A DNA stretch of 64,000 nucleotides, taken from positions 124,001-188,000 of IMG/VR virus record IMGVR_UViG_3300008259_005066; one strand, written 5' to 3'. Every line of letters begins with the position of its first letter. Within the stretch, counting starts at the first letter, position 1. Below are positions 2,483 through 32,401 of the stretch, piece after piece. The notes below the pieces were generated by a model that was given only the letters and a program-made list of their open reading frames with translations, did no database searches and was not told the DNA's origin. The position numbers were made by a program, and so were the translations under genes.

Positions 2483-2487
2483 GTGAA

Positions 2488-2494
2488 TACTTAG
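2488..2494 (-). promoter_or_regulatory. late-type promoter motif CTAAGTA
   Basis: Variant of recurring NTAA(A/G)TA motif, 5 nt before ATG. Confidence 0.6.
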
Positions 2495-2501
2495 CGAGGT
2501 C

Positions 2502-2534
2502 AAAAAAAGAGGCACCTTTTTAAAGGGTGCCTCT
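2502..2534 (-). terminator. intrinsic terminator after AAA ATPase
   Basis: AGAGGCACCC-tttaaaaa-GGTGCCTCT stem followed by T-run on minus strand. Confidence 0.85.
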
Positions 2535-3672: not shown

Positions 3673-3749
3673 CCTGGGCAAAAATCCCCCATTTTATGGG
3701 TGTTGTTTTTTTGCCACAGATCTATTCTGCTAAAATTTACTATAATTGT

Positions 3750-3778
3750 ATTTTACGGAAAAAGGATTTTGTGGTCAA
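3750..3778 (-). promoter_or_regulatory. sigma70-type early promoter (distal)
   Basis: TTGACC-N17-TAAAAT. Confidence 0.75.
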
Positions 3779-3782
3779 CCAC

Positions 3783-3808
3783 AAAAAAACCCTGCCGAAG
3801 GCAGGGTT
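3783..3808 (-). terminator. intrinsic terminator
   Basis: AACCCTGC-C(TTCG)G-GCAGGGTT then T-run. Confidence 0.9.
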
Positions 3809-3829
3809 GTTTTACCATTTGAAACTATA

Positions 3830-4273
3830 TCAGGTGGGTGATACATTACCTGGATTTGTTACATCAATAGTGAACGTGATGGTCTCTCCTGCGCTGATTT
3901 CAAAAAACCAACCGCTCCAGATGGGGCTCTGGGGCGTGCCGCCTGGCATTGGATCCACTGGTGTGGCTGGCCATTCAGGTGCTTGTCCGTTGATTAGGAT
4001 GTCGTTGTTTCTCATATCAAAGCCACAGGTAGATGGATCAGTTGAACGGACTACTTGCCCCACAGTGATTACACCGGATGTGACAGATACTGACACAGGG
4101 GCAGTAACAACAGCGTTGCCTGTCACTGGAATATCTGTAGAAAACAATGTAATTTCTGTGTCTAGCGGTTGTCCAACTCCTACTTGTCCGCTAAAAACTT
4201 CATTGCCATCGATTAAAATTGTTGTTGCCGAGGGTGTTGCAAAAACACGTCCGCGGAATAATACGCTTGCCAT
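3830..4273 (-). CDS. hypothetical protein, beta-rich, possibly virion-associated
   Basis: 147-aa ORF with SD AAGGA, own terminator and upstream late motif. Confidence 0.7.
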   Translation of the reverse strand: MASVLFRGRVFATPSATTILIDGNEVFSGQVGVGQPLDTEITLFSTDIPVTGNAVVTAPVSVSVTSGVITVGQVVRSTDPSTCGFDMRNNDILINGQAPEWPATPVDPMPGGTPQSPIWSGWFFEISAGETITFTIDVTNPGNVSPT

Positions 4274-4292
4274 AATTTTTCCTTTTGAATAT

Positions 4293-4386
4293 CTAAATAC
4301 GACATTAGGCTGGCTATCGCTTGGCTTAGCGCACCCGGATCTTTATCGTGCGATACAGCCGTATCCGAACCGCACATAGTATTTAG
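4293..4386 (-). ncRNA. candidate structured 5' leader RNA (unnamed)
   Basis: Non-coding interval with several short helices and loop-loop complementarity, bounded by a CTAAATAC/GTATTTAG inverted repeat. Confidence 0.4.
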
Positions 4387-5141
4387 CACCAGTGCTGTTC
4401 AATCACAGCATCTTTCACTTCGTGTGGTTTGGGACTGCCATGGAAAATCAACACACTGGTAGAATCTGGTATGTGTGTTCCAGTGCCGGGGGCTAGATAT
4501 TTACGGGTGCGAAAATCAAATCCTCCATCTTTGAGTTGCCAGCGCCAACTTTGCACCCTGGTTTTTTCAAAGTAATTTTCTCGGCCAGGACCCAGTATCT
4601 CATGTAGATAGTCCTGATCACCGTGCCATGCCGTGCGTTTGTGTGCTATTTGCCCAGGATCAAAATGCTGATAAATGTGCGCGAACTTCGCAGGATCAAA
4701 CCACATCATGCTGGAGTTCATGGCTATTTTACTGGGCCGGAACAGATATTTGAAGTCTTGCACAGCCCAGAATCTATCCGTGGGCAATCGCCACACCCAA
4801 TCAAGATTGCCTACGATCACTGTGTCCAGATCCAAATACAGCATGGGTCCTCTATGATGCCGTGGGTTGAATAACTGTATCTTGTACCACCACGATCGTT
4901 TGGGGCCGCGCACACCAGGCCATTCTTCCAAGGCATGATGTATCATGTGACCAGGCACTACTCTGTTGCTTTCGGTATAAACATGCATTCTCACCGGCAG
5001 AGAAAGATTGCGACAAAGAGCATTGTAGAGTTTGTCCACATAGTCCCATGGATACAAGGTGTCGTGTATCAAGCAGGCGCAATCAATATGCTCCAATGTC
5101 GCTGTTTCTACGACAGCGCGGTTTTTATTCTTTTTAACCAT
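4383..5141 (-). CDS. GT-A fold glycosyltransferase (GT8-like)
   Basis: LYLDLDTV DxD motif, GDQDYL motif, C-terminal IFHGSPKPH. Confidence 0.75.
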   Translation of the reverse strand: MVKKNKNRAVVETATLEHIDCACLIHDTLYPWDYVDKLYNALCRNLSLPVRMHVYTESNRVVPGHMIHHALEEWPGVRGPKRSWWYKIQLFNPRHHRGPMLYLDLDTVIVGNLDWVWRLPTDRFWAVQDFKYLFRPSKIAMNSSMMWFDPAKFAHIYQHFDPGQIAHKRTAWHGDQDYLHEILGPGRENYFEKTRVQSWRWQLKDGGFDFRTRKYLAPGTGTHIPDSTSVLIFHGSPKPHEVKDAVIEQHWC

Positions 5142-5956
5142 GAACCTTGTCTTATTTCATCAACTGTGTATTCTGTGTGGCATATCTCAACTAACCATCG
5201 ATCTCTGTCGTGATCTACCAACGTGTCTAGATCCTCGTATTTGGTACGAATAGGAGCAGCCAAACTGCTGGGATCCACGATGACTTGGCAACCAGACAGG
5301 GCGGCCTGTATGCCCGAGCCACTGTTATAATTTATCAAGGCCCTGCAGTCATAATTGATATCAAAATCATCGTAGGTATTTTTTATAGGGCGAGGCATTT
5401 CTATGGTCACATCTCGAGGCAAAAGACCTGGATCCAATGCACTCCTGGGATGTGGTCTCACGACTATGGGCAAGTCTGTGTGTGAACGAGCCAAGGCGAT
5501 TTGTTGATTGATCCAGTGTTCCATGCTGGGCAATGATTCTACCTGGAAACTCTGTTTGTGTTGCGCGGCTATGATCAATCGTGGTTGGCCCAAGCGCACT
5601 GGATATAGTTTAACTCCCAATTTGGCAGGGCGATCCCAATCAAGATCCGTGGTGTGTCCATAGTATCCCTGTGCGGTGATGTTGTCCACAGCGATCTTCC
5701 ATGTGTGCCCACGTTTCAGTGCGCCCACATCTATCACTATCACCGGTCGGCCGAGATTTTTATAATGCTGATACACTGAACGATTGGGTTGCATGCGACC
5801 GTGCCACAACACCGACCAGATCACCGCTACATCCGCATCTAGAGAATTTTCTCTACGTTGCCATCCCTGTTGAGAACATCGATCCAAAAAGGCTCCCAAC
5901 ACTTCTTTGCTGTTGAGAGCGCACTGAGATGGAAAATAGGCGATGGTCTTGATCAC
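5108..5956 (-). CDS. capsule-synthesis (KpsC/KpsS-like) GT-B protein
   Basis: LIIAAQ...IVVRPHP...INYNSGSGIQAALSG pattern. Start set at GTG 5956 (VIKTIAYFP); the ORF-track extension to 6388 overlaps a real plus-strand gene. Confidence 0.6.
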   Translation of the reverse strand: MIKTIAYFPSQCALNSKEVLGAFLDRCSQQGWQRRENSLDADVAVIWSVLWHGRMQPNRSVYQHYKNLGRPVIVIDVGALKRGHTWKIAVDNITAQGYYGHTTDLDWDRPAKLGVKLYPVRLGQPRLIIAAQHKQSFQVESLPSMEHWINQQIALARSHTDLPIVVRPHPRSALDPGLLPRDVTIEMPRPIKNTYDDFDINYDCRALINYNSGSGIQAALSGCQVIVDPSSLAAPIRTKYEDLDTLVDHDRDRWLVEICHTEYTVDEIRQGSWLKRIKTALS

Positions 5957-5962
5957 TAAATA
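5956..5962 (+). promoter_or_regulatory. late-type promoter motif CTAAATA
   Basis: 7 nt before ATG 5970. Confidence 0.65.
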
Positions 5963-5969
5963 TCCTGCG

Positions 5970-6809
5970 ATGAAATACACAGTAATTACCACGTTCCATG
6001 CCCCGGGTCTCAAACAATATGGCCAGCGCATGATCGACGCTTTTGATCGCCATTGGCCCGGAGATGTGGAACTGATAGTATATGCAGAAAATTGCCAGCC
6101 CAGATCGCCCAGCGATCGTGTGAAGATCCTGGATCTGTTGGCACAGTCACCAGATTTGGTAAATTTCAAAAATCGCTGGGGCAACGATCCCATGGCCAAT
6201 GGGTTGGTGGCCAAAGACACCGGAGTACCGTTCAAAGACAATGCTTTCAAGTGGGATGCAGTGAGATTCAGCCACAAGGTCTTTGCTGTGATCCATGCTT
6301 GCCGCACTCTAGACAGCGACTGGGTGATATGGTTAGATGCAGACACAGTGACTTTCCAGGACGTTCCGGAAAATTTCTTGAGCACCATATGCGAAGATTC
6401 AGCAATGGCCTGTTATCTGGGACGCAGGGAAAAATATCACAGCGAATGCGGATGGGTGGCCTATAATCGGCGCCATCCCGATTTGCTCAGTTTCATGGAC
6501 CGTTGGCATGATCTTTATGTCACAGGAGATCTTTTCCGCCTGCGCGAATATCATGACAGTTTTGTATTTGACGTGATCCGCAAAGACTTCCAGACGCAAC
6601 GACAGACCTCTTTCCACAATCTCAGTCCCGAACTGCCGGGCAAAGGCCCAGGGCATCCTTTTATCGCCAGTCGCTTGGGCCTATACATGGATCACATGAA
6701 AGGCTCTAAACGCAAGGCCTTGGGACATAGCCTACCCGATGATTATGATCGCAATCAAGGATTGAACAGCAGTGTGGGGTATTGGCAAGGAATCTTTGGC
6801 AGGCGCTGA
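5970..6809 (+). CDS. GT-A fold glycosyltransferase
   Basis: KWDAVRFSHKVFA, VIWLDADT DxD motif, YHDSFVFD, DHMKG; start MKYTVITTF. Confidence 0.75.
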   Translation: MKYTVITTFHAPGLKQYGQRMIDAFDRHWPGDVELIVYAENCQPRSPSDRVKILDLLAQSPDLVNFKNRWGNDPMANGLVAKDTGVPFKDNAFKWDAVRFSHKVFAVIHACRTLDSDWVIWLDADTVTFQDVPENFLSTICEDSAMACYLGRREKYHSECGWVAYNRRHPDLLSFMDRWHDLYVTGDLFRLREYHDSFVFDVIRKDFQTQRQTSFHNLSPELPGKGPGHPFIASRLGLYMDHMKGSKRKALGHSLPDDYDRNQGLNSSVGYWQGIFGRR

Positions 6810-7708
6810 CGCATGAATCGCCAGGCTTCACCGCTGGAGATCTCTTCCGAGCTCCAATGGCATTGTGCTAGTTTAGTATAAAACTCTTGTCGATCACCAC
6901 GGCGTGGTGATTCGATCTCTGCTATGTTGTTGCTGGCCCAGGGCCAGGCTTGGCTTTTGGCAGGTCGAGGATCTGTGACAAATGCAGGAACTCCCCACAG
7001 TATGCTGGCCACACCTGGACTGGAATTGTAGGTCACTGTGGCCCAGGTTTGATTGAGATCTTCTCTGATGTCTTGTTGTGTGCTCCAGGCAACCTGGGCC
7101 ACAGATGGTAGTTGTATGGTAGGCACTATGGCTAGATTTCCTGGGTGAGGTCTGATCACAATGGGTCGATCAGTGTGCTGGCGTATCTGAGGCAACAAGG
7201 TATCCAACCACTGTTGCACCGGAACGTCGCCCATGCTCCAACCGCCATTGCGTTGCAGTGCGACCAAGATATTGCGACCGTTGTTGCTCCATCCGCGCTC
7301 GGCGAAACCATAATGGGCTTTGATTCGTTGCCAGCGTTGTAGATCCGGGTCGCGATCAAAATAATAACCAGTGTCAGGAAACACGTCGTCTAGGCTATAA
7401 CGCAGATAACGATTGAAATCTGCAGGTTCCAAGAAACCAAACAGATTGCTGTCCATGGCCAAAGTATGTCCATTGCTTCGCCGTTGTTGTTTGATCACCC
7501 GACGGCGCACTTCGAGGTGTGCGCCGGTTTTCATTCCTATCCAGCCTTGGAGCACTGCCACATCACATTCTACAGGTTCGTCTTGGGTCACTAGATATAC
7601 TTCATCTCCGGCCAACTTGGCACCATGGGCAAATCTAGTCAAGATATCGCGCTTGAATTCGTTTTTAGATTTCCTAGGAACACCAGAGAGGTATACAGCT
7701 ATTTTCAT
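6755..7708 (-). CDS. capsule-synthesis (KpsC/KpsS-like) GT-B protein
   Basis: ILVALQ...IVIRPHP...VTYNSSPGVASILWGVP pattern, paralogous to 5108..5956. Confidence 0.6.
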   Translation of the reverse strand: MKIAVYLSGVPRKSKNEFKRDILTRFAHGAKLAGDEVYLVTQDEPVECDVAVLQGWIGMKTGAHLEVRRRVIKQQRRSNGHTLAMDSNLFGFLEPADFNRYLRYSLDDVFPDTGYYFDRDPDLQRWQRIKAHYGFAERGWSNNGRNILVALQRNGGWSMGDVPVQQWLDTLLPQIRQHTDRPIVIRPHPGNLAIVPTIQLPSVAQVAWSTQQDIREDLNQTWATVTYNSSPGVASILWGVPAFVTDPRPAKSQAWPWASNNIAEIESPRRGDRQEFYTKLAQCHWSSEEISSGEAWRFMRQRLPKIPCQYPTLLFNP

Positions 7709-9369
7709 TCTTGTCCGTTTATCACGGCCCAGGCATAGCCTGAGCGCATCTCTTCCACTGTGAACTGATGGTAGGCTAGACAGCGCAAAAGGGCATAGAC
7801 CTGATCAGTGTCCGGCATGAACGGTGTTTCTATAGTGGATAGATCTTTGTTGGACAATGGCTGTGCGGCATTGGGCCCCATGGTAAACACTGGTTTGCCA
7901 TAGATCAAACTTTCCACCGCGGCGATAGAATTGAAAGTGACCACACAATGCACATCTCGGTTGAGTGCATCCTGCATGGTATCCACGCTGGCTCTCACAC
8001 TGCGAGGCTGTTTGAGACGCACTTCAATCTCTCGATCAGTGTATTCTTTGATCGTGGTTATGGTCTTTTCCATCCAGCAATCTAGATCCAGATTCCAATA
8101 TTTCATAGCTTTCTCGCTGGGCGGACAGATCAAGATCTTACTGCCTGGTGTGTGACGATAGGGTCGGACTCTGGTGCGGTCTAATCTATCACTAGGCCGA
8201 TCTTGGATGGGACCTAACCATTGCATGGCATTCTTGGTCACTCTGTGATAGTCTTTGAGTTTTCCGTTACCAAAATATCCTGTGTCGATATAGTAGTAGT
8301 CTCGGCCCTGTTGTTCGCATCGTTGCATTATTTTTTTCTTGGTGATACTGCGCAGAGCGATAGGGTTGTCGCTGTGCTCCACATCTACCCAGGGACTGAT
8401 GCGTCCCATGGCACCGGTGACAAAACTATGCACTATGCCATCATACTTGATACCTTTTTCTTTGGCCTTGCGGCTGACGTCTTCCATTTCACTTATTCCT
8501 ATTAATTGCTTTTGTTCTGGATCACAGGCATATCTCTGGATACGCTGGCACACATCATCATAACCGTGTTGGTTGTAACCGTAGAGATTTTTGCTGTCTT
8601 GGATAGACCAGACCACATCCTTGAGTAACTGCCGTAGTTCCTGGGGGTAATCAAGATTATCGATCTCTTTGGTGCTGTGATCCACTTGTTTGGCACGCAG
8701 ATCACATTGATATTCTTTCCATACATCGCTGTAAGCACAATGGCTGTAGTTGTCAAACCAGGGGCCGCCTTCGGTGTAATGCAGAGCTTTGGGTGTGCCA
8801 TCCCATGGCTGATGATACCATCCTACCAACCAGTTCCACTCGGGTCTGAGTTCGCCAATTTCTTCTTCTTTGAGCCAAGAGAATCTGTGTAGTTCCTGTC
8901 CGGTGGCATTGTTGATATGATAGGGCGTGAGCCATTCGTTTGATTTATGTCCGCAGTTGAACAATATCATGCTGGACCAATTCTTGCGAGGGTAATACTC
9001 TTGTCGCTGGCCATCCATCTTGACAGTGTTTTGTGGGCGATAGTCATGTTTGACCAACATCACGGCATATCGTGGGTCAGCCTGTGCTATGAGTTCTTGT
9101 ATGTCTCCCAACCAGAGGAAATCACAGTCACAAAATATAGCCCAGCCTTTATAGTCATTGAGACGCGGAACTAAAAATCTCGTGAAGGTGAATTCCGTGC
9201 TGGCCTGCACGTCTCTGGGTCTGGTGTAAAGCAGATTCTCTCTCAGATCATCTTGTTTGAGCATATGGATCGTCACAGGCTCGGATGCGTTTTGCTGTAT
9301 GCTGTATTCGCACACATCGGCGGCTATGGGTTCTCGGCTGTCCCAGCCTATGTAAACATTGGTAGTCAT
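7705..9369 (-). CDS. two-domain glycosyltransferase: N-terminal GT-A plus C-terminal KpsS-like domain
   Basis: VYIGWDSRE, STEFTFTRF, FCDCDFL, RKNWSS, ALHYTEGGPWF; C-terminal VVTFNSIAAVESLIYGKP. Confidence 0.75.
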   Translation of the reverse strand: MTTNVYIGWDSREPIAADVCEYSIQQNASEPVTIHMLKQDDLRENLLYTRPRDVQASTEFTFTRFLVPRLNDYKGWAIFCDCDFLWLGDIQELIAQADPRYAVMLVKHDYRPQNTVKMDGQRQEYYPRKNWSSMILFNCGHKSNEWLTPYHINNATGQELHRFSWLKEEEIGELRPEWNWLVGWYHQPWDGTPKALHYTEGGPWFDNYSHCAYSDVWKEYQCDLRAKQVDHSTKEIDNLDYPQELRQLLKDVVWSIQDSKNLYGYNQHGYDDVCQRIQRYACDPEQKQLIGISEMEDVSRKAKEKGIKYDGIVHSFVTGAMGRISPWVDVEHSDNPIALRSITKKKIMQRCEQQGRDYYYIDTGYFGNGKLKDYHRVTKNAMQWLGPIQDRPSDRLDRTRVRPYRHTPGSKILICPPSEKAMKYWNLDLDCWMEKTITTIKEYTDREIEVRLKQPRSVRASVDTMQDALNRDVHCVVTFNSIAAVESLIYGKPVFTMGPNAAQPLSNKDLSTIETPFMPDTDQVYALLRCLAYHQFTVEEMRSGYAWAVINGQE

Positions 9370-10133
9370 AACTGTCTTTCTATGTCCTCTTCTTCACAAC
9401 GATCACCATACTGTATCTCCACTATCTTGAGCGGGTTAGGATCTTCGTTGACCAACTGATGCCATTCATGTGTGCTGATATGTAGATACTGATGACGCTG
9501 ATAACGGCCCTGTAGTTCAGTGTCCGTGGTAGTTGAATCCACTGTGTAGACCGTGGCTTCGCCCGATGCTACCAACCAGAATTCTGCGCGATCTTGATGA
9601 CGTTGCATGCTGAGAGCGGCTCCTGGCTCTACTGTGAGTTCTTTGACTTTCACTCCCGGTGTTTCATGCAACACGCGATAATAACCCCATGGACGTCGTG
9701 TCTGAGGCGCTTTCCATTCTTCCAGTATCCAGGACGAAGAATTGGCTTTGTTGAATCCACCTATGCCAAACACAAACTTCACATTGTCATCGGCCACATC
9801 CATCTCAGGACAGTTGTAGTCAGTCCTATCACCGCCGTTGGCGAAAATAATCTCATCCTGCGGATAACTCTGCCGACACATCCTGATGGCATTTTTTGCA
9901 GTTCCGTCTGAATCATCAAAATCTATCACGTAGTCCACACCAGCGATAGCCCGTAATATGGCAGTGCGTTCGCGCAGAGGCATGAATGCACGCCCTTTCT
10001 TTTGTCGCAACCATGCATCGGAGTTGGCACCTATCACTAGGATGTCTCCCAGTGCCTTGGCTGCTTGGATGTAAGCAAGGTGCCCAGAATGTATGGGATC
10101 GAATCCCCCGGTTATCAAAACTATTTTCTTCAT
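9366..10133 (-). CDS. HxGH-type nucleotidyltransferase fused to mannose-6-phosphate-isomerase-type cupin
   Basis: ITGGFDPIHSGH, FANGGDR; C-terminal RPWG...SMQRHQDRAEFW cupin. Confidence 0.85.
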   Translation of the reverse strand: MKKIVLITGGFDPIHSGHLAYIQAAKALGDILVIGANSDAWLRQKKGRAFMPLRERTAILRAIAGVDYVIDFDDSDGTAKNAIRMCRQSYPQDEIIFANGGDRTDYNCPEMDVADDNVKFVFGIGGFNKANSSSWILEEWKAPQTRRPWGYYRVLHETPGVKVKELTVEPGAALSMQRHQDRAEFWLVASGEATVYTVDSTTTDTELQGRYQRHQYLHISTHEWHQLVNEDPNPLKIVEIQYGDRCEEEDIERQL

Positions 10134-10690
10134 CGTTTTTCCAATATCACATCATATTTGCTGCCAAACAGTATGGGATTTTTTTCTCGTCTATCGAAAG
10201 GTTCTACTCGTTCCCATACGATATTGACCTGCATGTTTTTAAGTATCTGCTCTCGCCACCAGTCCGGCTCTTTTACGATAAGATGGCAGTTACGCCCATC
10301 GGGTAATAGTTTTTTAGCAGGATGGCAGGCTATGCGGAAAAATCCACAGCGTTGCATCTTGTCGCTCATCACTGCCAGGCTCTGAGCCAAGTGCTCGGGT
10401 TCGATATGTTCGATGGCATCAGTGGATATGATAGTGTCGAAAGTCCGCGTGGGCATGACAGCGAAATCTGGATTGCCTGGATCGTATCCAAACACTTCTA
10501 TGGCAGGAAAATTCTCTTTGATGGTAGCGATCAGCGCACCTTTGCCGCAACCAAAATCAATGAGATCGCGGGGTTGATATTGTTCGATAAATGGTCTGAC
10601 CAATTTGAATTGCTTGGCACCGTTGTTGAACTTGCCTTTTTCATGCATGGCCTGTATCTGTTGTTGATAACTTTGATTGATTATAGTCAT
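10130..10690 (-). CDS. class I SAM-dependent methyltransferase
   Basis: LIDFGCGKG motif I, DAIEHI. Confidence 0.85.
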   Translation of the reverse strand: MTIINQSYQQQIQAMHEKGKFNNGAKQFKLVRPFIEQYQPRDLIDFGCGKGALIATIKENFPAIEVFGYDPGNPDFAVMPTRTFDTIISTDAIEHIEPEHLAQSLAVMSDKMQRCGFFRIACHPAKKLLPDGRNCHLIVKEPDWWREQILKNMQVNIVWERVEPFDRREKNPILFGSKYDVILEKR

Positions 10691-11421
10691 ACTCGGAATA
10701 ATTTCCTATCTTGATGTGCGTCTATGTTGATGTATCTGCGCAAACAGTTGGCACCTATACGCGGGGTCACGCCGTGGATGGTATCTGCTGTGTTGAGAAA
10801 CAGTATCATGGTATTGGCACGATACGGAACTGTTCCGGCTGCTGCCACATGATCCGGATTGACTTCTCTGATGCCAGTGTATTCTGGAGCGGGCACCAGT
10901 TTGCGGAACACCTGGATGTCGCCGCCCACGCTGGTGTCTTCGGGTTTGCGCATATACAACAGGCCAGCAAACAGTTCTCGGCTGTTGTCCAAATGCGTGG
11001 TCCTCACTGTGGTATCTTGCTGACCGTTAAGAACGAACTGCACTTCCATCTGCACTGTGCCAGCGCGACCATCATGCCGTTCTGATACTCCTGCATCACG
11101 TAGATCTTGGGCAAACTCTGGATAATACTTTTCCAGGGCTGGTTCAAAAAGATCCAACACACGATTTTTGAAAGACACACTGTTGTGATAGGCCACAAAT
11201 TCTTGCCACAATGGAGACACAGTTCCTGGAACGAATTCATGCTGACGATAACGGCGTGCCTGGAAATGTGTCTTGCCATCCTGCATCATGTGTGCTTCAG
11301 GATACTCTGCTATCAACTGATCATACAATGTCTGCGGTAGAGCATCATGGATGCAAAAATACGGGCAAGGATCCTGTAGGAGATCGTCTTTGGTTATGGT
11401 CTGTGTTACATCAAGATGCAT
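10687..11421 (-). CDS. 2OG-Fe(II) oxygenase
   Basis: THLD...IHGVTPR...RRY (HxD...H...R). Start moved to ATG 11421, coupled to upstream stop. Confidence 0.8.
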   Translation of the reverse strand: MHLDVTQTITKDDLLQDPCPYFCIHDALPQTLYDQLIAEYPEAHMMQDGKTHFQARRYRQHEFVPGTVSPLWQEFVAYHNSVSFKNRVLDLFEPALEKYYPEFAQDLRDAGVSERHDGRAGTVQMEVQFVLNGQQDTTVRTTHLDNSRELFAGLLYMRKPEDTSVGGDIQVFRKLVPAPEYTGIREVNPDHVAAAGTVPYRANTMILFLNTADTIHGVTPRIGANCLRRYINIDAHQDRKLFRV

Positions 11422-12220
11422 CGCTGTTTCCTTGTTGATAAAATGGCTTGATATCATCCGATGATAATTCATGACCATTGAGCCATAATTCTCTATAGGC
11501 CGAAAGAGGCCAGTGTTTTTTTCTCTTGGTTTTCATATGACGGAACCATTCTCCCAACCAATGACCATGTATGGGTGTGCTTTTTTTCCTATGGCATTGA
11601 GATCGAAGATTGACATGATCCACGGTCAATGCCGCATGCATGCATATCTCTCCGTCCCAAAACATCCATGCTGATTCAGGCATGCAAGGCTCAAGATAAT
11701 AGCGCGAATATTCATCTCGGAATTTGGAAAAATCAGCATGTGCAGTGTCGATCAACACGAAGCCACTTTCTGCGGTAACGACCAATCGATCATCCACGGG
11801 CCGACTCACATCAAACAGTGCCACACAGTGATCTTCCAACGCACGATCCAGATGTTGCGATTCAAAAGGACGCATGGTAAAACTATCTGCATCTAACCAG
11901 CATATCCGATCGTGACTGTGATTCATCATATGGACCCAGGCCAGTCCTTTTTTGGTATAGCGTTGAGTATGCTGACTGCCCCAATGAGGCATCAGTGTGG
12001 TTGAGTTCTGCGCGATATGATCAAAGTTTTGACCGCAACAGGTCTGCCAGTCTCTGATCTCAAGTCGAGGATCCGTGGGCAAATCGATATCGTCTTCAAG
12101 ATACACTACCATTTTTGCATCTTGGGGCCAGTGATGCAACCATGAAGCCAGCATCTCCTCGGCGATGATGTCGTATAGCCTGCGATTAAAACTGGTAAAG
12201 CATGTCCAAGTGGGATTCAT
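11411..12220 (-). CDS. GT-A fold glycosyltransferase-like protein
   Basis: CWLDADSF DxD, AESGFV; resembles 5970..6809. Confidence 0.6.
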   Translation of the reverse strand: MNPTWTCFTSFNRRLYDIIAEEMLASWLHHWPQDAKMVVYLEDDIDLPTDPRLEIRDWQTCCGQNFDHIAQNSTTLMPHWGSQHTQRYTKKGLAWVHMMNHSHDRICWLDADSFTMRPFESQHLDRALEDHCVALFDVSRPVDDRLVVTAESGFVLIDTAHADFSKFRDEYSRYYLEPCMPESAWMFWDGEICMHAALTVDHVNLRSQCHRKKSTPIHGHWLGEWFRHMKTKRKKHWPLSAYRELWLNGHELSSDDIKPFYQQGNSDAS

Positions 12221-12876
12221 GATTTCTGCACCACTACAAATTTTTGTTTGGTGAATTCTTGGTCGGGACCAAAATATTCATCCACGGCTTTTTTAGCGCC
12301 ATCCCAACTGTGATAGTCATCAATCACGAGATACCCACCACTGACCAGTCGAGGATATAACACTTCTAACTCAATCTTTGTGCTGAGATAAAAATCTGTG
12401 TCCAATCTCAAAAATGCTATCTGATCCGGTAGATCCAATGATGTCAAAGTTTGGCTTACATCTCCCTTGATGAAATGTGTCCTATGCGGGGGCAATACCG
12501 ACCATACATTGTTCTGCACATCATCTAGATCGGCTCTGCACCAGTTGCGGCCTTCGTGTCCACCTTTGCGCCATTTTAAACTTTCAGTGGCATGTTTGCC
12601 TTCTCTATAATCATATTCAGACACTCCTTGCATACCTTCAAATGTATCATAGAGCCAATAATCTCTTTCATGATCGTCTACCATGGCAGCGGCCATGATC
12701 TGACCTCCGCGCCAGACGCCACATTCAACCACCGCTCCGGGTATGTCTCGTTGATTGAGATCTTGTATCAGGCGCTGGGTAAAAATCACGAATTTTCCGC
12801 TGGTCATCGTGAACTCGCGCACACGTTCGGCCACTGCAAGTTCCTGTTCGGAATAAGGTCTGTCAGCAGTGATCAT
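12217..12876 (-). CDS. TylF/MycF-family O-methyltransferase
   Basis: VECGVWRGG, YDTFEG, LRLDTDFYLST, VIDDY. Confidence 0.9.
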   Translation of the reverse strand: MITADRPYSEQELAVAERVREFTMTSGKFVIFTQRLIQDLNQRDIPGAVVECGVWRGGQIMAAAMVDDHERDYWLYDTFEGMQGVSEYDYREGKHATESLKWRKGGHEGRNWCRADLDDVQNNVWSVLPPHRTHFIKGDVSQTLTSLDLPDQIAFLRLDTDFYLSTKIELEVLYPRLVSGGYLVIDDYHSWDGAKKAVDEYFGPDQEFTKQKFVVVQKS

Positions 12877-13601
12877 CGGTAATTTCCAGCGATGCCATCG
12901 TCGCTGATGTTGTCACCACCATACATGTGCTGTATGGGTATTTCAAATGGTGCATCCTTGACTTTGCGGAACACAGCAGCCACCATGGGATCGCTTTCCC
13001 AGGTATCAAGTTCTAGTTTGCCTCTGTAGCCTTTGTTGCGACCCAGATTGTTGACGTCTAGTTTGTGTAGATATTGGGCATCACTGGATGCGATCCATAA
13101 CTCTCTCAACTCATAATCGTTTTGATTGGCCAAGCACGGAAACAGATTGGGGTTGTAGTTGAAGAATCCATGATCCACCCAGCGATAGAATGGCAGCACA
13201 TGGATCATGAATCCGCCCACACGGCAAAGGTCATGTGCATTCTTGAACACCATGTATTGGTTGAACACATGTTCCCCGGTGCCGTTGTTTGTGACCAGAT
13301 CAAACTGCTCATGGAATCCGTAGGTCTTGGGTATGTCTACGTTGAGATCCATGGCCACTGCATCTCGTTCAGTATTGACGTCAATGGCCAAGTATCGATC
13401 AAACCCTAGACTGAGATACCAATCTTTGGTTCCACCTAATTCTGCGGGCGGAGATATGCCTAGCTTTTGATAGATTTCACCGCGTGCCTTGGTGTTCTTG
13501 AGAGTTTGATTGCCCAGTTCAATGACTGTGGGCCGACGATTAGTTACAAGTTCGGGCGCTACTGAACCCACTGCTTTTGTGATTAGATTGCTGAATCCCA
13601 T
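12873..13601 (-). CDS. SAM-dependent methyltransferase-like protein
   Basis: IELGNQ, FDLVTNNGTGEHVFNQ; SD GGAGG. Confidence 0.7.
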   Translation of the reverse strand: MGFSNLITKAVGSVAPELVTNRRPTVIELGNQTLKNTKARGEIYQKLGISPPAELGGTKDWYLSLGFDRYLAIDVNTERDAVAMDLNVDIPKTYGFHEQFDLVTNNGTGEHVFNQYMVFKNAHDLCRVGGFMIHVLPFYRWVDHGFFNYNPNLFPCLANQNDYELRELWIASSDAQYLHKLDVNNLGRNKGYRGKLELDTWESDPMVAAVFRKVKDAPFEIPIQHMYGGDNISDDGIAGNYR

Positions 13602-13616
13602 GTGACCTCCATGGGG

Positions 13617-13623
13617 TATTTAT
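13617..13623 (-). promoter_or_regulatory. late-type promoter motif ATAAATA
   Basis: Upstream of GGAGG SD and ATG 13601. Confidence 0.6.
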
Positions 13624-13641
13624 CTACGCAGTTTATTGCGA

Positions 13642-14406
13642 TCAATGATCGCCAAAATAGGCCAGGCTTTTGTCCAACCAAGGCAATAACAGATCTCTCT
13701 GGCGCACATAGCCATATCGATCCAAACTTACCACTGCGCTGGAAGGTAACATGCCTCGTTCGGCTAGATGATACCACGACGTGGTCTTGGGATCGCTGGG
13801 CTGATGACCACTGCGATACACTATGATGTTGATCCAGGGATCTGCGGGATTTTTTTGGAAGAATCCCGATGAGCAGTCCCAACCGGTAGTGGCCAACATA
13901 TACATCAAGCTGACCACGGTGTGATTGTAATAACAATGACTGGGCAGGTCAAAGGCCTGGCGCTGGAATTCGATGTTGGTGGTTTGCGGCACCATGAGCA
14001 CCAGCATGGCACCAGGATTGGCGATGTTCCACCAATTGGACAGGCAACCCAGGGGATTGATCATGTATTGGAACGTGTCATGACACCACAGTAGGTCATA
14101 TCGGTGTTTGGTTTGATTGAGAGTCTCTAGATCTTGTTTTATGTAGTGGACGCCGGCACGTCTAGCTGGGGGTGCCAGTGAATCGACCACGGTATCCACA
14201 CCTGTGCAAGTGATATTGAGAGGTCTAGGGTTGTCATCTCTGGTGGTTCGGGTGGCCCACCAGGTGAGATCCAGAGCATCTGCTCCGCATCCTAGGTCTA
14301 TCACGCGGCCCACGCTTTCCATGAAATCGTCGTGTTCATACAGCGATTCCAGCACTTGAAGACTGTGCTCGTGGCTGGCTTGTGGGCTTGAGAATCCTTT
14401 ATGCAT
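13642..14406 (-). CDS. class I SAM-dependent methyltransferase
   Basis: VIDLGCG, YDLLWCHDTFQY. Confidence 0.8.
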   Translation of the reverse strand: MHKGFSSPQASHEHSLQVLESLYEHDDFMESVGRVIDLGCGADALDLTWWATRTTRDDNPRPLNITCTGVDTVVDSLAPPARRAGVHYIKQDLETLNQTKHRYDLLWCHDTFQYMINPLGCLSNWWNIANPGAMLVLMVPQTTNIEFQRQAFDLPSHCYYNHTVVSLMYMLATTGWDCSSGFFQKNPADPWINIIVYRSGHQPSDPKTTSWYHLAERGMLPSSAVVSLDRYGYVRQRDLLLPWLDKSLAYFGDH

Positions 14407-15427
14407 GAGAAAATTCTTCCAATATCTGTGTATGCCTAACTATGGCTGTGGCATGTATATAGTCGATCAGTTGAGCATTGGCTTGCAATCGATCCCAATG
14501 TTGTTGTCTCAATTCTACCATGTCTTGCTGGCTGACACGATGCACCAATTGCACTACCTGAGTCATGCGCACCCAGGGATCTGGTATATCATCATATGAG
14601 TGATTGTCAAACACATCATCAAACACATCAAACCCCATGCGCCTCACTTGGGCCACCAAGCCGGGCACTGCATACCAAACAGGAAACTGATGCCATGCCA
14701 TGGCTTTGAAAGTTTTTTCTGTGATAAAAATACTGCGCCAGGTGTTGGGGTCGATCTGGCTGGAACTTTCTACTACTAGATTCACAGGTGCTCGATAGAA
14801 AAAATCATGATCTATGCGATGCTGAAAAACTTGATCAGCCATAGGGCGGTCAACAATCATGGGATATGGTCGCGGCCATATCAACTGCTTGATGTCATCG
14901 CTGGGCTCCACACCATTGGTGCCAAACGTCATTATCAGTTCATCAGATCTGAATTTTGATAGCAGCCGTTTTGCGAGATTCGCTCTGCCGATGCTGGGCC
15001 TTCGCATGAGACAGGTCAGTCGGTGCGTCATTGGCAAGCCTGCCCAGTTGATGCGGTAATGCCGAAGATGATCATACCAATTACCATTGTAGATCAATCT
15101 GTCGGGCAGTGATGTAGCTCGATAAGGCAATCGATCAATCTGTTCTACACAACTGAATATTACCCGGAAATTTTCAACAGGAACCTGTCTTCTTTGACAT
15201 AACAAATCAAACATTCCTTGCATGTCTCCAGCATCAATGCCTTCGGGCTTGAGATCAAAAACCCAAATATAATCGCGGGCATCGTTCAATGAAAGTCTGT
15301 GTTGTTCAAGATCCTGTTCCAGTAATGGAACAAACCCATCGGATCTCAGTTCTTGTGAAGTGATATTGCGCCAAGCATCATAATATAAAACTCGGCCATT
15401 GTCATGCAGTCGTAAACGACTGATCAT
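14399..15427 (-). CDS. putative GT-B/GT10-like protein (TEK motif family)
   Basis: VNLVVESS...FITEKTFK...GFDVFDD motif shared with 62881..63951. Start ATG 15427 overlaps uvsY stop (ATGA). Confidence 0.5.
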   Translation of the reverse strand: MISRLRLHDNGRVLYYDAWRNITSQELRSDGFVPLLEQDLEQHRLSLNDARDYIWVFDLKPEGIDAGDMQGMFDLLCQRRQVPVENFRVIFSCVEQIDRLPYRATSLPDRLIYNGNWYDHLRHYRINWAGLPMTHRLTCLMRRPSIGRANLAKRLLSKFRSDELIMTFGTNGVEPSDDIKQLIWPRPYPMIVDRPMADQVFQHRIDHDFFYRAPVNLVVESSSQIDPNTWRSIFITEKTFKAMAWHQFPVWYAVPGLVAQVRRMGFDVFDDVFDNHSYDDIPDPWVRMTQVVQLVHRVSQQDMVELRQQHWDRLQANAQLIDYIHATAIVRHTQILEEFSHA

Positions 15428-15876
15428 ACCTGGATGTCTTCCATCCCCGCTGTGCGCAAGCGGACGATATGTCCCATTTGCCATTGTTTAGTATCAAGCC
15501 CTTTCATGATACCCAACCAACGATTACGTAAGAGAGCCACTTCGTTGATGATGGTCTCAAAATCAATGACCTCGTCCTCGCCATCTACATATTTTTCCGC
15601 GTCTCGGCTGGTCAGCGCCCGGGCGTAACCCTCGAGATACTTCTGGAAATGGCGACGGCGGATCTTGCGCAATTGGATATTGAGATAGTTTAAGATGGCT
15701 TCTATCTCTTGCAATTGGTTAAAACGATGTTCAGTGATACCGGGCAATTCCTTGATATTGGTTTCAACAAAGCCACCGATCCTGCACTCGCGTTTGGCTT
15801 CCTCTAGCTCGCGCTCGTAGTGTGCTATAAAATCTGGAATAGCACTCAGGTTAGCAACTACTCGGCTATACCACAT
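15424..15876 (-). CDS. uvsY: UvsY recombination mediator
   Basis: Helical 150-aa protein with YLEGYARALTSRDAEKYVDGE and KQWQMGHIVRLRTAGMED; near uvsX and gp32. Confidence 0.8.
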   Translation of the reverse strand: MWYSRVVANLSAIPDFIAHYERELEEAKRECRIGGFVETNIKELPGITEHRFNQLQEIEAILNYLNIQLRKIRRRHFQKYLEGYARALTSRDAEKYVDGEDEVIDFETIINEVALLRNRWLGIMKGLDTKQWQMGHIVRLRTAGMEDIQV

Positions 15877-32045: not shown

Positions 32046-32401
32046 GGTAACACATTGCGGGCCGCATAGAAGTTAGGTTGCACCACGGCATTCACACCCA
32101 ACAGCGTGGCGTTGCTTCTTTGGTTGTTGAGATAGTAACACAAGGTAGATGTCAATTGTAACTGGTCTTGTCCTTGTATTTCTTGGAGCAATTCCAGCAC
32201 AGGACGTCTACTGTAATCTGCTACCTGGAACAGACTCACTGTAAAATTTTTGGCTGCGGTCTTGTCTTTGAAAATCCTAGCAAAATAACTGTAGACCGCA
32301 TCGTATTGATCCACAGGAACTTCTACGGCAAATTCGTAAAAATTATCAAACACCCTGACAGTCATGTCAAGTCTTGGATCGGTATAGTTTACTGTGCTCA
32401 T
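32042..32401 (-). CDS. hypothetical protein
   Basis: 119-aa ORF with ATGA overlaps on both sides. Confidence 0.65.
   Translation of the reverse strand: MSTVNYTDPRLDMTVRVFDNFYEFAVEVPVDQYDAVYSYFARIFKDKTAAKNFTVSLFQVADYSRRPVLELLQEIQGQDQLQLTSTLCYYLNNQRSNATLLGVNAVVQPNFYAARNVLP

What the first reader, a model, noticed from the sequence alone, without database searches (positions are those of the whole stretch)
4383..15427. Phage-encoded glycan assembly and decoration cluster
Seen: 13 tightly packed ORFs. They comprise four GT-A DxD domains, three KpsC/KpsS-like domains, an HxGH nucleotidyltransferase-cupin fusion, four methyltransferases including a TylF/MycF type, a 2OG-Fe(II) oxygenase and a TEK-motif GT-like gene. 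Internal late-type promoters lie at 5956 and 13617. Known: KpsC/KpsS are Kdo transferases of capsule synthesis, TylF/MycF methylate sugar hydroxyls, and HxGH enzymes (TagD/HldE-type) activate polyol-phosphates or heptose. Inference: this is a complete pathway making a methylated/hydroxylated polymeric glycan, for virion coating or host-surface remodelling. That is far more than the single glucosyltransferases used for T4 DNA modification.
Basis: partly seen in the sequence, partly recalled or inferred. Interest (0 to 1): 0.75.

Follow-up and report, generated by a model that had tools for sequence, protein, structure and literature searches.

The report
Jumbo-phage glycan assembly and tailoring cluster
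An uncultured freshwater jumbo phage carries an 11-kb block of sugar-adding and sugar-decorating enzymes, mostly from virus-only families, that most likely coats phage particle proteins with a methylated glycan; relatives of the block are common in lake phages but none has been tested.

Summary
Window 4383-15427 has 13 contiguous genes. They encode four GT-A (DxD) domains, three KpsC-like GT-B domains, an HxGH nucleotidyltransferase-cupin fusion, four SAM methyltransferases (one TylF), a weak 2OG-Fe(II) oxygenase and a GT-B-fold protein. T4-late-type motifs lie at 5956 and 13617.

Corrections:
- One gene (5970-6809) is on the + strand.
- ORF 5108-6388 is really 5108-5956.
- The unit probably runs on to a 14th ORF (3830-4273) and a terminator at 3788-3808.

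"Complete pathway" is wrong. None of the 13 proteins has a membrane segment. A 91%-complete copy of the same phage (316 kb) has no initiating transferase or flippase. That copy does have two further sugar-nucleotide loci elsewhere, including GDP-mannose dehydratase, a DegT aminotransferase and a GHMP kinase.

The core of the cluster is conserved next to uvsY in many lake-phage contigs. Its families are virus-only and lack Pfam models.

Best reading: late-expressed, cytoplasmic glycosylation of phage virion proteins (about 0.45). Rivals are host LPS or glycolipid remodelling (about 0.25) and DNA glycosylation (about 0.08). The DNA reading is disfavoured by the absence of any base-hydroxymethylation route and by strong restriction-site avoidance.

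The parts
14399..15427 (-). g13: GT-B-fold glycosyltransferase-like protein (342 aa), with the 'ITEKTFKA' motif
   Evidence: AF2 pLDDT 90.6. The best AFDB cluster is 'GT family 1', E 6e-12, TM 0.62. All 50 top VIA matches are GT-B glycosyltransferases at Z 8.6-10.4. No Pfam hit in 40 homologues. 189 homologues, all unnamed.
13642..14406 (-). g12: class I SAM methyltransferase
   Evidence: Methyltransf_11 at 1.5e-5, above the cut-off. Present in nearly all related loci.
13617..13623 (-). Late-type promoter motif ATAAATA, 16 nt before the g11 ATG
   Evidence: 'CCCAGATAAATA' is conserved upstream of all 4 diverged g11 orthologues.
12873..13601 (-). g11: divergent class I SAM methyltransferase
   Evidence: Pfam is weak (0.014). 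Atlas score 0.98 with 228 shared features, and all family-bearing neighbours are methyltransferases.
12217..12876 (-). g10: TylF/MycF-type O-methyltransferase
   Evidence: PF05711 at 8.1e-30, 104 bits against a cut-off of 23. Rare in relatives, 1 of 13 loci.
11411..12220 (-). g9: GT-A (DxD 'DAD') glycosyltransferase-like protein, paralogue of g3
   Evidence: BLASTP to g3 at 1.8e-7 and to g3 orthologues at 1.4e-10. No Pfam hit of its own.
10687..11478 (-). g8: 2OG-Fe(II) oxygenase-like protein (prolyl-hydroxylase-type family); probable true start at 11421
   Evidence: PF13640 at 6.4e-4, 21 bits, below the cut-off of 27. Orthologues begin at residue 20. No Tet_JBP match.
10130..10690 (-). g7: class I SAM methyltransferase
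   Evidence: Methyltransf_23 at 6.2e-8.
9366..10133 (-). g6: HxGH nucleotidyltransferase (HldC/TagD type) fused to a type II mannose-6-phosphate-isomerase cupin
   Evidence: PF01467 at 2.4e-14 and PF01050 at 3e-22. rfaE_dom_II at 1e-19. The best PDB match is 5x9q, then ECT and TagD. At least 7998 homologue clusters exist; all 120 listed carry the cupin, and all but one truncated 205-aa entry (P0508) also carry the nucleotidyltransferase domain.
7705..9369 (-). g5: two-domain protein. N-terminus is a GT8-like GT-A (DxD 'DCD'); C-terminus is a KpsC-like domain without the HP motif
   Evidence: phrog_28018 at 1.6e-54. GT8 is weak here but present in the split orthologue. The C-terminus is a paralogue of g2 and g4. 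Capsule_synth scores E 0.009 on this domain. 'RLKQP' stands in place of 'RPHP'.
6755..7708 (-). g4: KpsC/WbbB-like GT-B transferase with RxHP and NSS motifs
   Evidence: AF2 pLDDT 90. Foldseek's top PDB hits are KpsC, WbbB and KrkA. In a profile search of the PDB, KpsC and WbbB are the only hits, with HP and NS aligned. 3669 homologue clusters, none with a Pfam domain.
5970..6809 (+). g3: GT-A (DxD 'DAD') glycosyltransferase-like protein, the only gene on the + strand
   Evidence: GT2 at 1e-3, below the cut-off. Atlas neighbours carry GT8/Nucleotid_trans and are all viral. The opposite-strand orientation is conserved in all relatives.
5956..5962 (+). Late-type promoter motif CTAAATA, 7 nt before the g3 ATG; it overlaps the g2 GTG start on the other strand
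   Evidence: A motif lies upstream of g3 orthologues in 9 of 14 diverged loci.
5108..5956 (-). g2: KpsC-like GT-B transferase with the RPHP motif (GTG start)
   Evidence: Paralogue of g4 (7e-10) and of the g5 C-terminus (1e-7). The N-terminal extension to 6388 is antisense to g3 and has the wrong codon-position GC. The start context 'ATATTTAGTG' is conserved.
4383..5141 (-). g1: GT-A (DxD 'DLD') glycosyltransferase
   Evidence: phrog_1962 'glycosyltransferase' at 3.6e-24. GT8 is weak at 0.08. Present in all related loci that reach this position.
3830..4273 (-). orf147: small S/T/P-rich beta-type protein, a probable 14th gene and a candidate acceptor or structural protein
   Evidence: A CTAAATA motif lies at 4386-4380. 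It is 22% Ser+Thr. Positional counterparts in L003 and L005 share only a loose N-terminal pattern seen by eye; BLASTP supports only L003-L005 (6e-5) and a weak C-terminal window-L003 match (E 0.01). Nothing informative in the Atlas or Pfam.
3788..3808 (-). Intrinsic terminator ending the minus-strand unit
   Evidence: 9-bp stem with 6 GC pairs, followed by a run of T. Sigma-70-like promoters for the next gene follow at 3778-3644.

Best explanation
The block is the main glycan-assembly locus of an uncultured freshwater jumbo myophage of about 316 kb.

Proposed mechanism:
1. All 13 enzymes are soluble and work in the infected cell's cytoplasm.
2. g6 isomerises a ketose phosphate and/or makes one nucleotide-activated sugar or sugar-phosphate. 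Other donors come from the host and from the phage's own sugar-nucleotide loci elsewhere in its genome (GDP-mannose dehydratase, epimerases/reductases, a DegT aminotransferase, a GHMP kinase).
3. Four GT-A transferases, one GT-B transferase and three KpsC-like transferases add residues one after another. The HP motif in two of the KpsC-like domains suggests a CMP- or CDP-linked donor such as an ulosonic acid.
4. Four methyltransferases (one of the sugar-O-methyl TylF type) and a 2OG oxygenase tailor the product.
5. Most of the block is transcribed from T4-late-type promoters together with structural genes.
6. The most likely acceptor is therefore a phage virion protein, for example Ser/Thr-rich tails or linkers of tail-tube and fibre proteins, or the small S/T-rich ORF at the end of the operon. 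This would give a glycan coat whose accessory decorations vary between related phages.

What is shown: gene content, folds, paralogy, synteny, promoter motifs, and the absence of membrane or export parts.
What is inferred: donor identities, the order of steps, and the acceptor.

Confidence that this is a glycan assembly and tailoring locus is about 0.9. Confidence that the acceptor is a virion protein is about 0.45.
For: Enzyme classes.

No membrane or export machinery:
- No hydrophobic segment in any of the 13 proteins.
- No Bac_transf, Glycos_transf_4 or Polysacc_synt in the 91%-complete copy G001, which is identical over the 21-kb locus.

Phage-encoded sugar-nucleotide loci in G001.

Late-type promoters:
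- (C/A)TAAATA is enriched before start codons and before sheath, fibre and virion genes.
- It is present before g11, g3 and orf147 and conserved in relatives.
- The neighbouring ATPase gene instead has conserved TATAAT-type promoters.

The families are virus-only:
- The listed nearest Atlas structural neighbours of g4 are 100% viral and those of g13 94-100% viral, among members with a recorded taxon.
- g3 clusters are viral.
- No relative of g4 was found in 185,579 species genomes.

The core is conserved beside uvsY in all 13 diverged IMG/VR loci, while the accessory genes vary.

Related modules lie next to tail genes in Caulobacter phage CcrColossus.

A further GT42/Maf-like gene sits among the fibre genes of this window.

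Candidate acceptors with T/S/P-rich segments exist.

Precedent: glycans on capsid and tail-tube C-termini of mycobacteriophages, as summarised in PMC12619734.
Against: - No glycoprotein, glycan or enzyme activity has been observed; the acceptor is inferred.
- The cluster lies in the replication/recombination module (gp32-uvsX-uvsY ... helicase), not in the structural module.
- The nearest solved relatives (KpsC, WbbB, GT8, HldC) all act on lipid-linked envelope glycans.
- Peripheral LPS-core enzymes also lack membrane segments, so the lack of such segments here does not exclude envelope work.
- g13 and g12 have no late motif of their own and are probably co-transcribed with uvsY.
- Several family assignments are below curated thresholds (g3, g8, g9, g11, g5 N-terminus).
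- The RNA evidence is only short pieces of relatives in two metatranscriptome libraries.
Confidence: 0.45

Rival explanations
1. Host-envelope remodelling. The soluble enzymes act at the inner face of the host membrane on lipid A-core, lyso-phosphatidylglycerol or undecaprenyl-linked intermediates. Host flippases export the altered LPS or capsule anchor. The result is changed receptors: exclusion of other phages, or no loss of progeny on cell debris.
For: - The closest solved relatives act on envelope glycolipids: KpsC/WbbB/KrkA, GT8, HldC/RfaE-II and TagD.
- LPS-core and KpsC/KpsS enzymes are peripheral proteins without membrane segments (established knowledge), so fits this reading too.
- The same idea was proposed for GT8/rfaE clusters of pelagimyophages (PMC7029224), and Pelagibacter phage Mosig carries the g3-g5-g1 module.
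- g1, g2 and g4 are basic proteins with pI 8.2-9.1.
Against: - The families are virus-only with no close bacterial relatives. Genes acting on variable host glycans would be expected to be exchanged with hosts.
- The core is conserved in phages of very different hosts (Pelagibacter, Caulobacter, lake phages).
- Late-type promoters fit poorly with an early receptor-masking role.
- No phage-encoded export or ligation step.
Confidence: 0.25
2. DNA hypermodification. The transferases build mono- to oligosaccharides on a modified base in phage DNA to block restriction, as in the 5hmC-glycan gene clusters described by Pyle et al.
For: - The cluster sits among replication and recombination genes.
- All of its enzymes are soluble.
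- Phage clusters are known to put Kdo, heptose and di- or trisaccharides on 5hmC using GT-B enzymes and a cytidylyltransferase (bioRxiv 10.1101/2023.12.21.572611).
- The g13 model matches T4 alpha- and beta-glucosyltransferases at Z about 10.
- A dNMP kinase is encoded at 38039-38746.
Against: - No thymidylate-synthase/hydroxymethylase family, C5 DNA methylase or Tet_JBP in G000 or in the 91%-complete G001. The Tet_JBP control was silent, so that one negative is weak.
- g8 is not TET-like and is missing from most relatives that keep the core.
- Strong restriction-site avoidance in the genome: GTAC observed/expected 0.11 and AGCT 0.37 (the only 4-mers below 0.6), AGCGCT 1 against 24 expected. 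This argues that the DNA is not globally shielded.
- The T4 glucosyltransferase matches do not stand above other GT-B folds.
- A sulfotransferase in Mosig and a tail-gene context in CcrColossus do not fit DNA as target.
Confidence: 0.08
3. A soluble small-molecule product. This could be a glycosylated, methylated metabolite or nucleotide-linked oligosaccharide that acts as a signal, an inhibitor of a host defence or a storage compound, with no macromolecular acceptor.
For: - TylF-type methyltransferases and GT-B enzymes are typical of natural-product sugar tailoring.
- All enzymes are soluble.
- Radical SAM genes flank the block.
Against: - No scaffold-forming enzyme (PKS, NRPS, terpene or similar) was found among the ORFs scanned in or next to the cluster; the rest of the window was only partly scanned.
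- Eight transferase domains are many for a small molecule.
- The conserved core has no aglycone-related gene.
Confidence: 0.07

Closest known systems
Retaining beta-Kdo transferases KpsC/KpsS (GT107), WbbB (GT99) and KrkA
   Same: g4 has the same two-Rossmann-domain fold (top Foldseek hits, E 4e-9 to 1e-5). The RxHP motif and the following N/T-S motif of the nucleotide-binding domain align with KpsC 'KPHP' and WbbB 'RAHP ... NSS'. The domain occurs in several copies per locus, as in KpsC.
   Different: - No significant sequence match: profile E 0.68-2, and Capsule_synth only weak.
- In the weak alignment, the Gln of the KpsC 'QVESD' segment is kept but the Asp four residues on is not (g4 QRNGG, g2 QHKQS). 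That this Asp is the catalytic nucleophile is from my own knowledge.
- The g5 C-terminal domain lacks HP altogether.
- The phage encodes no KdsA or KdsB.
- The family is virus-only.
Mycobacteriophage virion glycosylation (Che8/Corndog/Myrna type)
   Same: Phage-encoded soluble glycosyltransferases, a lytic phage, and a glycan thought to coat capsid or tail proteins on Ser/Thr-rich tails.
   Different: The cluster here is far larger (8 transferase domains, 4 methyltransferases, an oxygenase, a nucleotidyltransferase). It uses different enzyme families, sits in the recombination module, belongs to a jumbo myophage whose host is unknown, and has no experimental evidence.
Giant-virus glycan machinery (chlorovirus and mimivirus capsid or fibril glycans)
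   Same: The virus encodes its own sugar-nucleotide enzymes (GDP-mannose dehydratase, aminotransferase), multi-domain GT and methyltransferase proteins, and methylated sugars, all working in the cytoplasm without host export machinery (my knowledge of those systems).
   Different: This is a bacteriophage. No homology was shown between the transferases. The acceptor is unknown.
'LPS-related' gene clusters of cyanomyophages and pelagimyophages
   Same: They contain GT8, rfaE-like nucleotidyltransferase, methyltransferases and 2OG oxygenases. Pelagibacter phage Mosig carries the homologous g3-g5N-g5C-g1 module.
   Different: In those phages the genes lie in hypervariable regions with tail fibres and are treated as host-derived auxiliary genes. 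Here the core is a fixed part of the genome backbone next to uvsY. The nucleotidyltransferase-cupin fusion and g13 are absent from all 50,697 deposited phage genomes.
Phage 5hmC-glycan DNA hypermodification clusters (Pyle et al.)
   Same: Several GTs related to LPS or teichoic-acid enzymes plus a cytidylyltransferase; Kdo and heptose products are known.
   Different: The defining cytosine methyltransferase plus 5mC dioxygenase (or hydroxymethylase) is absent. The genome avoids restriction sites.

Membership tests
GT107/GT99 beta-Kdo transferases (KpsC, KpsS, WbbB) | Two-domain GT-B-like fold closest to KpsC/WbbB | tested here: met
   The g4 model (pLDDT 90) has KpsC, WbbB and KrkA as top PDB hits, E 4e-9 to 1e-5, TM about 0.5. 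g2 and the g5 C-terminus are linked only by paralogy.
GT107/GT99 beta-Kdo transferases (KpsC, KpsS, WbbB) | HP motif and following S/T-S motif that bind the CMP phosphate | tested here: met
   g4 has R186-x-H188-P189 and N228-S-S; g2 has RPHP. Both are nearly invariant in 54 diverse homologues and align to KpsC and WbbB. Not met by the g5 C-terminal subfamily, which has RLKQP.
GT107/GT99 beta-Kdo transferases (KpsC, KpsS, WbbB) | QxxxD motif with the catalytic Asp nucleophile (D160 in KpsC, D232 in WbbB) | tested here: not met
   In the alignment to 6mgd, Q152 aligns with the Gln of 'QVESD', but position +4 is Gly in g4, Ser in g2, and not conserved in the family. The alignment is weak (E 0.68), so this is provisional.
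GT107/GT99 beta-Kdo transferases (KpsC, KpsS, WbbB) | Significant match to Pfam Capsule_synth (PF05159) | tested here: not met
   No hit for g2 or g4. g5 C-terminus scores E 0.009, 12 bits against a cut-off of 20. 3 of 54 homologues hit weakly.
GT107/GT99 beta-Kdo transferases (KpsC, KpsS, WbbB) | Uses CMP-beta-Kdo as donor | not testable with these tools
   Needs an enzyme assay. The phage has no KdsA, KdsB or NeuB.
GT-A glycosyltransferases (GT8/GT2-like) | Profile match plus DxD motif | tested here: inconclusive
   g1 matches phrog_1962 at 3.6e-24. The orthologue of the g5 N-terminus carries PF01501. g3 matches GT2 at 19 bits against a cut-off of 23. g9 is linked only through g3. DxD is seen in all four sequences.
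TylF/MycF O-methyltransferases | Pfam PF05711 above the gathering score | tested here: met
   g10 scores 104.4 bits against a cut-off of 23, E 8.1e-30.
HxGH cytidylyltransferase-like nucleotidyltransferases (TagD, HldC/RfaE-II, ECT) | PF01467 match and the HxGH signature | tested here: met
   54 bits against a cut-off of 21. 'HSGH' at residues 15-18. PDB matches are 5x9q at 3.6e-11 and TagD at 2.7e-8. The substrate was not determined.
Type II phosphomannose isomerase cupin | PF01050 above the gathering score | tested here: met
   79 bits against a cut-off of 23.6, residues 145-253.
2OG-Fe(II) oxygenases (PF13640, prolyl-hydroxylase type) | Profile match above the cut-off; HxD...H triad | tested here: inconclusive
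   21.1 bits against a cut-off of 27. An 'HLD' and a later His are seen in the sequence. No PDB sequence match.
GT10 alpha-1,3-fucosyltransferases | Pfam Glyco_transf_10 match, or a fold match standing above other GT-B folds | tested here: not met
   No Pfam hit in 40 homologues. No PDB sequence hit. FUT9 and FucT13 reach Z 9.7, within the general GT-B band of 8.6-10.4. The 'ES..(I/V)TEK' likeness is from my memory only. A lead: the g13-like domain is fused to GDP-mannose dehydratase in other viruses.
Phage 5hmC-glycan DNA hypermodification clusters | Cytosine C5 methyltransferase plus 5mC dioxygenase (TET/JBP), or a dCMP/dUMP hydroxymethylase | tested here: not met
   None in G000 or in the 91%-complete G001. 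The Tet_JBP control rang nowhere at E 0.01, so that one negative is weak.
Autonomous surface-polysaccharide (Wzx/Wzy, ABC or synthase) pathways | Initiating polyprenyl-phosphate transferase and an export component | tested here: not met
   No Bac_transf, Glycos_transf_4 or Polysacc_synt in G001. No membrane segment in the cluster.
T4-type late promoters | TATAAATA-like motif enriched just upstream of late (structural) genes | tested here: met
   Dependence on a gp55-like sigma factor was not tested.

The most novel reading that the evidence does not exclude
The three KpsC-like domains would belong to a large, virus-only, unclassified glycosyltransferase family: 4767 representatives at 50% identity, with no Pfam model. 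The family keeps the CMP-binding HP/NSS half of the retaining beta-Kdo transferases but has lost their Asp nucleophile. On this reading it works by a different mechanism or on a different CMP- or CDP-linked donor. Together with the equally widespread nucleotidyltransferase-cupin fusion, it would form the conserved core of a virion-glycosylation system shared by a whole clade of abundant freshwater jumbo phages. That would be a bacteriophage counterpart of giant-virus capsid glycosylation.
Probability: 0.25. Interest if true: 0.8.

Novelty: new variant of a known kind. Interest (0 to 1): 0.62.

Why it matters
- Phage glycosylation is known from a few cases: single DNA glucosyltransferases, seroconversion genes and mycobacteriophage capsid glycans. 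This is a multi-step, virus-encoded glycan factory built into the conserved backbone of a widespread, uncultured lake jumbo-phage clade.
- It is made largely of enzyme families that occur only in viruses and have no curated model.
- If the product coats virions, it would change how these phages' host recognition, stability, grazing losses and antigenicity are understood.
- It would also add thousands of sequences to new glycosyltransferase families.
- If the product instead rewires host LPS, it is a large auxiliary metabolic module.
- Either way, the KpsC-like family and the nucleotidyltransferase-cupin fusion are concrete, cloneable targets for enzymology.

Tried and rejected
- Megablast of the cluster against 50,697 phage records gave no match.
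- Single-sequence Pfam and NCBIfam scans left g2, g4, g9 and g13 blank.
- A narrow g4 profile against the PDB gave only noise.
- The g13 profile against the PDB hit only helical repeat proteins, which is spurious. A g13 motif fragment against the PDB gave noise.
- g8 against the PDB gave nothing.
- orf147 in the Atlas scored at chance level.
- A scan of 185,579 species genomes for g4 relatives found none. The broader alignment A4 was too divergent for that tool.
- I asked whether the phage is a 'moraphage' (PMC12619734, whose core includes four GT groups). No HSP70 was found and no link was shown, so I dropped this.
- RNA runs gave only 165-272-nt contigs of relatives at 90-98% identity in two libraries. 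These are kept as contigs without strand, so they give no evidence on timing or strand.
- A collagen-like acceptor for the oxygenase is rejected: there are no GXY repeats in the 209-kb genome.
- The + strand ORF 3696-4379 is rejected as a gene. It has no homologues, and a minus-strand promoter motif and terminator bracket the opposite ORF.

Full report
**What the window is.**
The window is part of an IMG/VR virus record of 209.5 kb, judged 60% complete. It encodes gp32, UvsX, UvsY, large terminase, tail sheath, tail tube and long fibre-like proteins. UvsX is 62-67% identical to those of Rak2/Atu_ph07/Phosso-type jumbo myophages. Near-identical DNA occurs in lake and freshwater metagenomes. A second IMG/VR contig, G001, is 315,778 bp and 91% complete. 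It carries the whole locus with 99-100% identical proteins, so it is a fuller copy of the same phage.

**The observation.**
Thirteen genes fill 4383-15427 with overlaps or gaps of 40 nt or less.

| Gene | Coordinates | Assignment | Evidence |
|---|---|---|---|
| g13 | 14399-15427 | GT-B-fold protein | |
| g12 | 13642-14406 | methyltransferase (Methyltransf_11) | |
| g11 | 12873-13601 | divergent methyltransferase | |
| g10 | 12217-12876 | TylF O-methyltransferase, 8e-30 | |
| g9 | 11411-12220 | GT-A, paralogue of g3 | |
| g8 | 10687-11478 | 2OG-Fe(II) oxygenase-like, below Pfam's cut-off | |
| g7 | 10130-10690 | methyltransferase (Methyltransf_23) | |
| g6 | 9366-10133 | HxGH nucleotidyltransferase + PMI-type cupin | |
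| g5 | 7705-9369 | GT8-like N-domain + KpsC-like C-domain | |
| g4 | 6755-7708 | KpsC-like | |
| g3 | 5970-6809, + strand | GT-A | |
| g2 | 5108-5956 | KpsC-like | |
| g1 | 4383-5141 | GT-A, phrog_1962 | |

Three details change:
- g3 is on the opposite strand.
- The 426-aa ORF 5108-6388 is an artefact. Its first 144 codons are antisense to g3, and the true g2 starts at GTG 5956.
- The transcription unit probably runs on through a small S/T/P-rich ORF (3830-4273) to a strong terminator at 3808-3788.

**The KpsC-like domains.**
- The g4 model (pLDDT 90) finds KpsC, WbbB and KrkA Kdo transferases ahead of all other GT-B folds.
- A profile of 54 diverse homologues finds only KpsC and WbbB in the PDB. 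The scores are not significant (E 0.68-2), but the RxHP and N/T-S motifs are aligned.
- In that alignment the Gln of KpsC's QVESD segment is matched, but the Asp that acts as nucleophile in these retaining enzymes (my knowledge) is not. The g5 C-terminal subfamily has also lost the HP motif.
- The family is very large: 3669 clusters for g4 alone and 4767 representatives at 50% identity. It has no Pfam model.
- Its nearest structural neighbours are all viral, and no relative was found in 185,579 species genomes.
- I therefore treat these domains as a virus-specific branch of the HP-motif GT-B transferases, not as members of GT107 or GT99. Kdo as the sugar remains a guess.

**The other parts.**
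- g13 is a GT-B fold with no subfamily standing out. T4 DNA glucosyltransferases, trehalose synthases and fucosyltransferases all score Z about 10. In other viruses the same domain is fused to a GDP-mannose dehydratase/epimerase, which hints at a 6-deoxyhexose donor.
- The nucleotidyltransferase of g6 is closest to HldC (ADP-heptose), ECT and TagD. Its cupin is the isomerase domain of bifunctional GMP/PMI enzymes.
- The g6 fusion is the best-conserved gene of the block: 73-97% identity over the 120 best of at least 7998 clusters. No deposited phage genome has it fused.

**Is it a complete pathway?**
No.
- None of the 13 proteins has a hydrophobic segment.
- G001 has no WbaP-type or WecA-type initiator and no Wzx-type flippase.
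- It has no KdsA, KdsB or NeuB.
- G001 does hold seven SDR epimerase/dehydratase genes in two further loci. These loci include a GDP-mannose 4,6-dehydratase (4e-73), a DegT aminotransferase (5e-73), an RmlD-like reductase, a GHMP sugar kinase, another methyltransferase and a weak GT1-like gene.
- The phage therefore invests more in glycan synthesis than the finding suggests. The window cluster is the assembly and tailoring part.

**Conservation.**
- In 13 diverged IMG/VR loci and three metagenome contigs, the block lies directly after uvsY and before a phrog_1250 ATPase.
- The always-present core is g12, g5, g4, g3 (always on the opposite strand), g2 and g1, often with a fourth or fifth KpsC-like gene.
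- The accessory genes vary: g6 is in 9 of 13 loci, g7 in 6, g8 in about 5, g11 in about 4, g13 in 3, and g9 and g10 in 1 each.
- Cultured Rak2-like phages lack the block at this position.
- Parts of the module occur in Pelagibacter phage Mosig, with two methyltransferases and a sulfotransferase.
- Parts also occur in Caulobacter phiCbK-like jumbo phages, between tail and lysis genes and beside a sialyltransferase-like gene.

**Timing.**
- (C/A)TAAATA is over-represented: 11 in the window against 3.8 expected.
- Genome-wide, more than half of its copies lie within 60 nt upstream of a same-strand start codon, including those of virion, sheath-neighbour and fibre genes.
- It stands before g11, g3 and orf147. 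The g11 site (CCCAGATAAATA, then GGAGG, then ATG) is conserved in all four diverged orthologous loci. A site precedes g3 in 9 of 14 loci.
- The neighbouring ATPase gene has conserved TATAAT-type promoters instead.

**Which acceptor?**
- *DNA.* DNA is a real rival, because phage clusters are known to put Kdo, heptose and short glycans on 5hmC. Here no route to a hydroxymethylated base was found in a 91%-complete genome. The genome also avoids GTAC (54 observed, 486 expected) and AGCT, and several 6-mer palindromes are nearly absent. This is the pattern expected of DNA that restriction enzymes can still cut.
- *Host envelope.* The known biochemistry of the nearest relatives favours this reading, and the lack of membrane segments does not exclude it. 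Late promoters, virus-only families and a fixed core across phages of very different hosts fit a phage-intrinsic acceptor better.
- *Candidate acceptors.* The tail-tube-like protein has a T/S/P-rich C-terminal tail. Poly-Thr linkers occur in a 1361-aa fibre-like protein and in two other proteins. orf147 at the operon's end is S/T-rich. A GT42/Maf-like gene also sits among the fibre genes.
- I put virion-protein glycosylation at about 0.45, envelope remodelling at about 0.25, DNA at about 0.08 and a soluble product at about 0.07.

**Novelty.**
Phage-encoded glycosylation is a known kind of system. Similar 'LPS-like' gene sets have been noted, untested, in pelagimyophages and cyanophages. Three things are new here:
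- the size and fixed backbone position of the locus;
- the virus-only KpsC-like family, which appears to lack the nucleophile;
- the conserved nucleotidyltransferase-cupin fusion.

The exact 13-gene set is not in any deposited phage genome.

Noticed in passing
window 61384-61971 (-): A 195-aa ORF among fibre-like late genes. It has weak CST-I (GT42 sialyltransferase, E 0.013) and MptE-like/Maf (E 0.079) matches, and BLASTP 7e-6 to CcrColossus gp126 'alpha-2,3-sialyltransferase-like'. It is a possible CMP-nonulosonate transferase outside the finding.
   Followed up: partly
G001 180-200 kb (L029) and 256-270 kb (L031), outside the window's record: The 316-kb copy of the same phage has two more sugar loci. 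They hold several NDP-sugar epimerase/dehydratases, GDP-mannose 4,6-dehydratase, a DegT aminotransferase, an RmlD-like reductase, a GHMP kinase, a methyltransferase, GTP cyclohydrolase I and an FG-GAP protein. One locus lies next to a Peptidase_G2 (tail-spike chaperone) protein.
   Followed up: partly
whole genome G000 (209.5 kb): Extreme avoidance of GTAC (observed/expected 0.11) and AGCT (0.37). AGCGCT, ACGCGT and GCGCGC are nearly absent, and GTGCAC is low. This points to strong restriction pressure from the unknown host.
   Followed up: partly
window 3830-4273 (-), with 3788-3808 and 4380-4386: A small S/T/P-rich ORF follows g1, with a late motif upstream and a strong terminator downstream. 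Fast-evolving positional counterparts exist in relatives; by eye, one has CBM5/12-like repeats. The overlapping + ORF 3696-4379 is probably spurious.
   Followed up: partly
window 32398-33666 (-); 47167-51252 (-); G000 84.3-86.5 kb: The tail-tube-like protein has a T/S/P-rich C-terminal tail (residues 375-404). Poly-Thr/Ser linkers occur in a 1361-aa fibre-like protein and in two neighbouring proteins. All are possible O-glycan sites.
   Followed up: no
window 15866-17119 (-) and 1310-2515 (-): Two radical SAM genes. One is wedged between uvsX and uvsY; it is present in some relatives and absent in others. Their function and any link to the glycan genes are unknown.
   Followed up: no
window 46473-47141 (-): A protein with an Mtd_N domain (major tropism determinant N-terminus, 1.9e-10), preceded by a late motif. 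It may be a receptor-binding protein of the kind diversified by retroelements. No reverse transcriptase was looked for.
   Followed up: no
window 5954-5962: The GTG start of g2 (-) and the CTAAATA motif of g3 (+) occupy the same bases. 'ATATTTAGTG' is conserved across diverged loci, so the two divergent genes share a 13-nt junction.
   Followed up: partly
window 2586-3611 (-): An AAA-type ATPase (phrog_1250, 2.7e-87) always follows the cluster in relatives. It has conserved sigma-70-like promoters, unlike the cluster. Its role is unknown.
   Followed up: no
Atlas neighbours of g3 and g13: In other viruses the g3-like GT-A domain is fused to MptE-like/Maf and TylF-type methyltransferase domains. 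The g13-like domain is fused to GDP-mannose dehydratase or to a methyltransferase. This points to a wider viral glycosylation toolkit.
   Followed up: no
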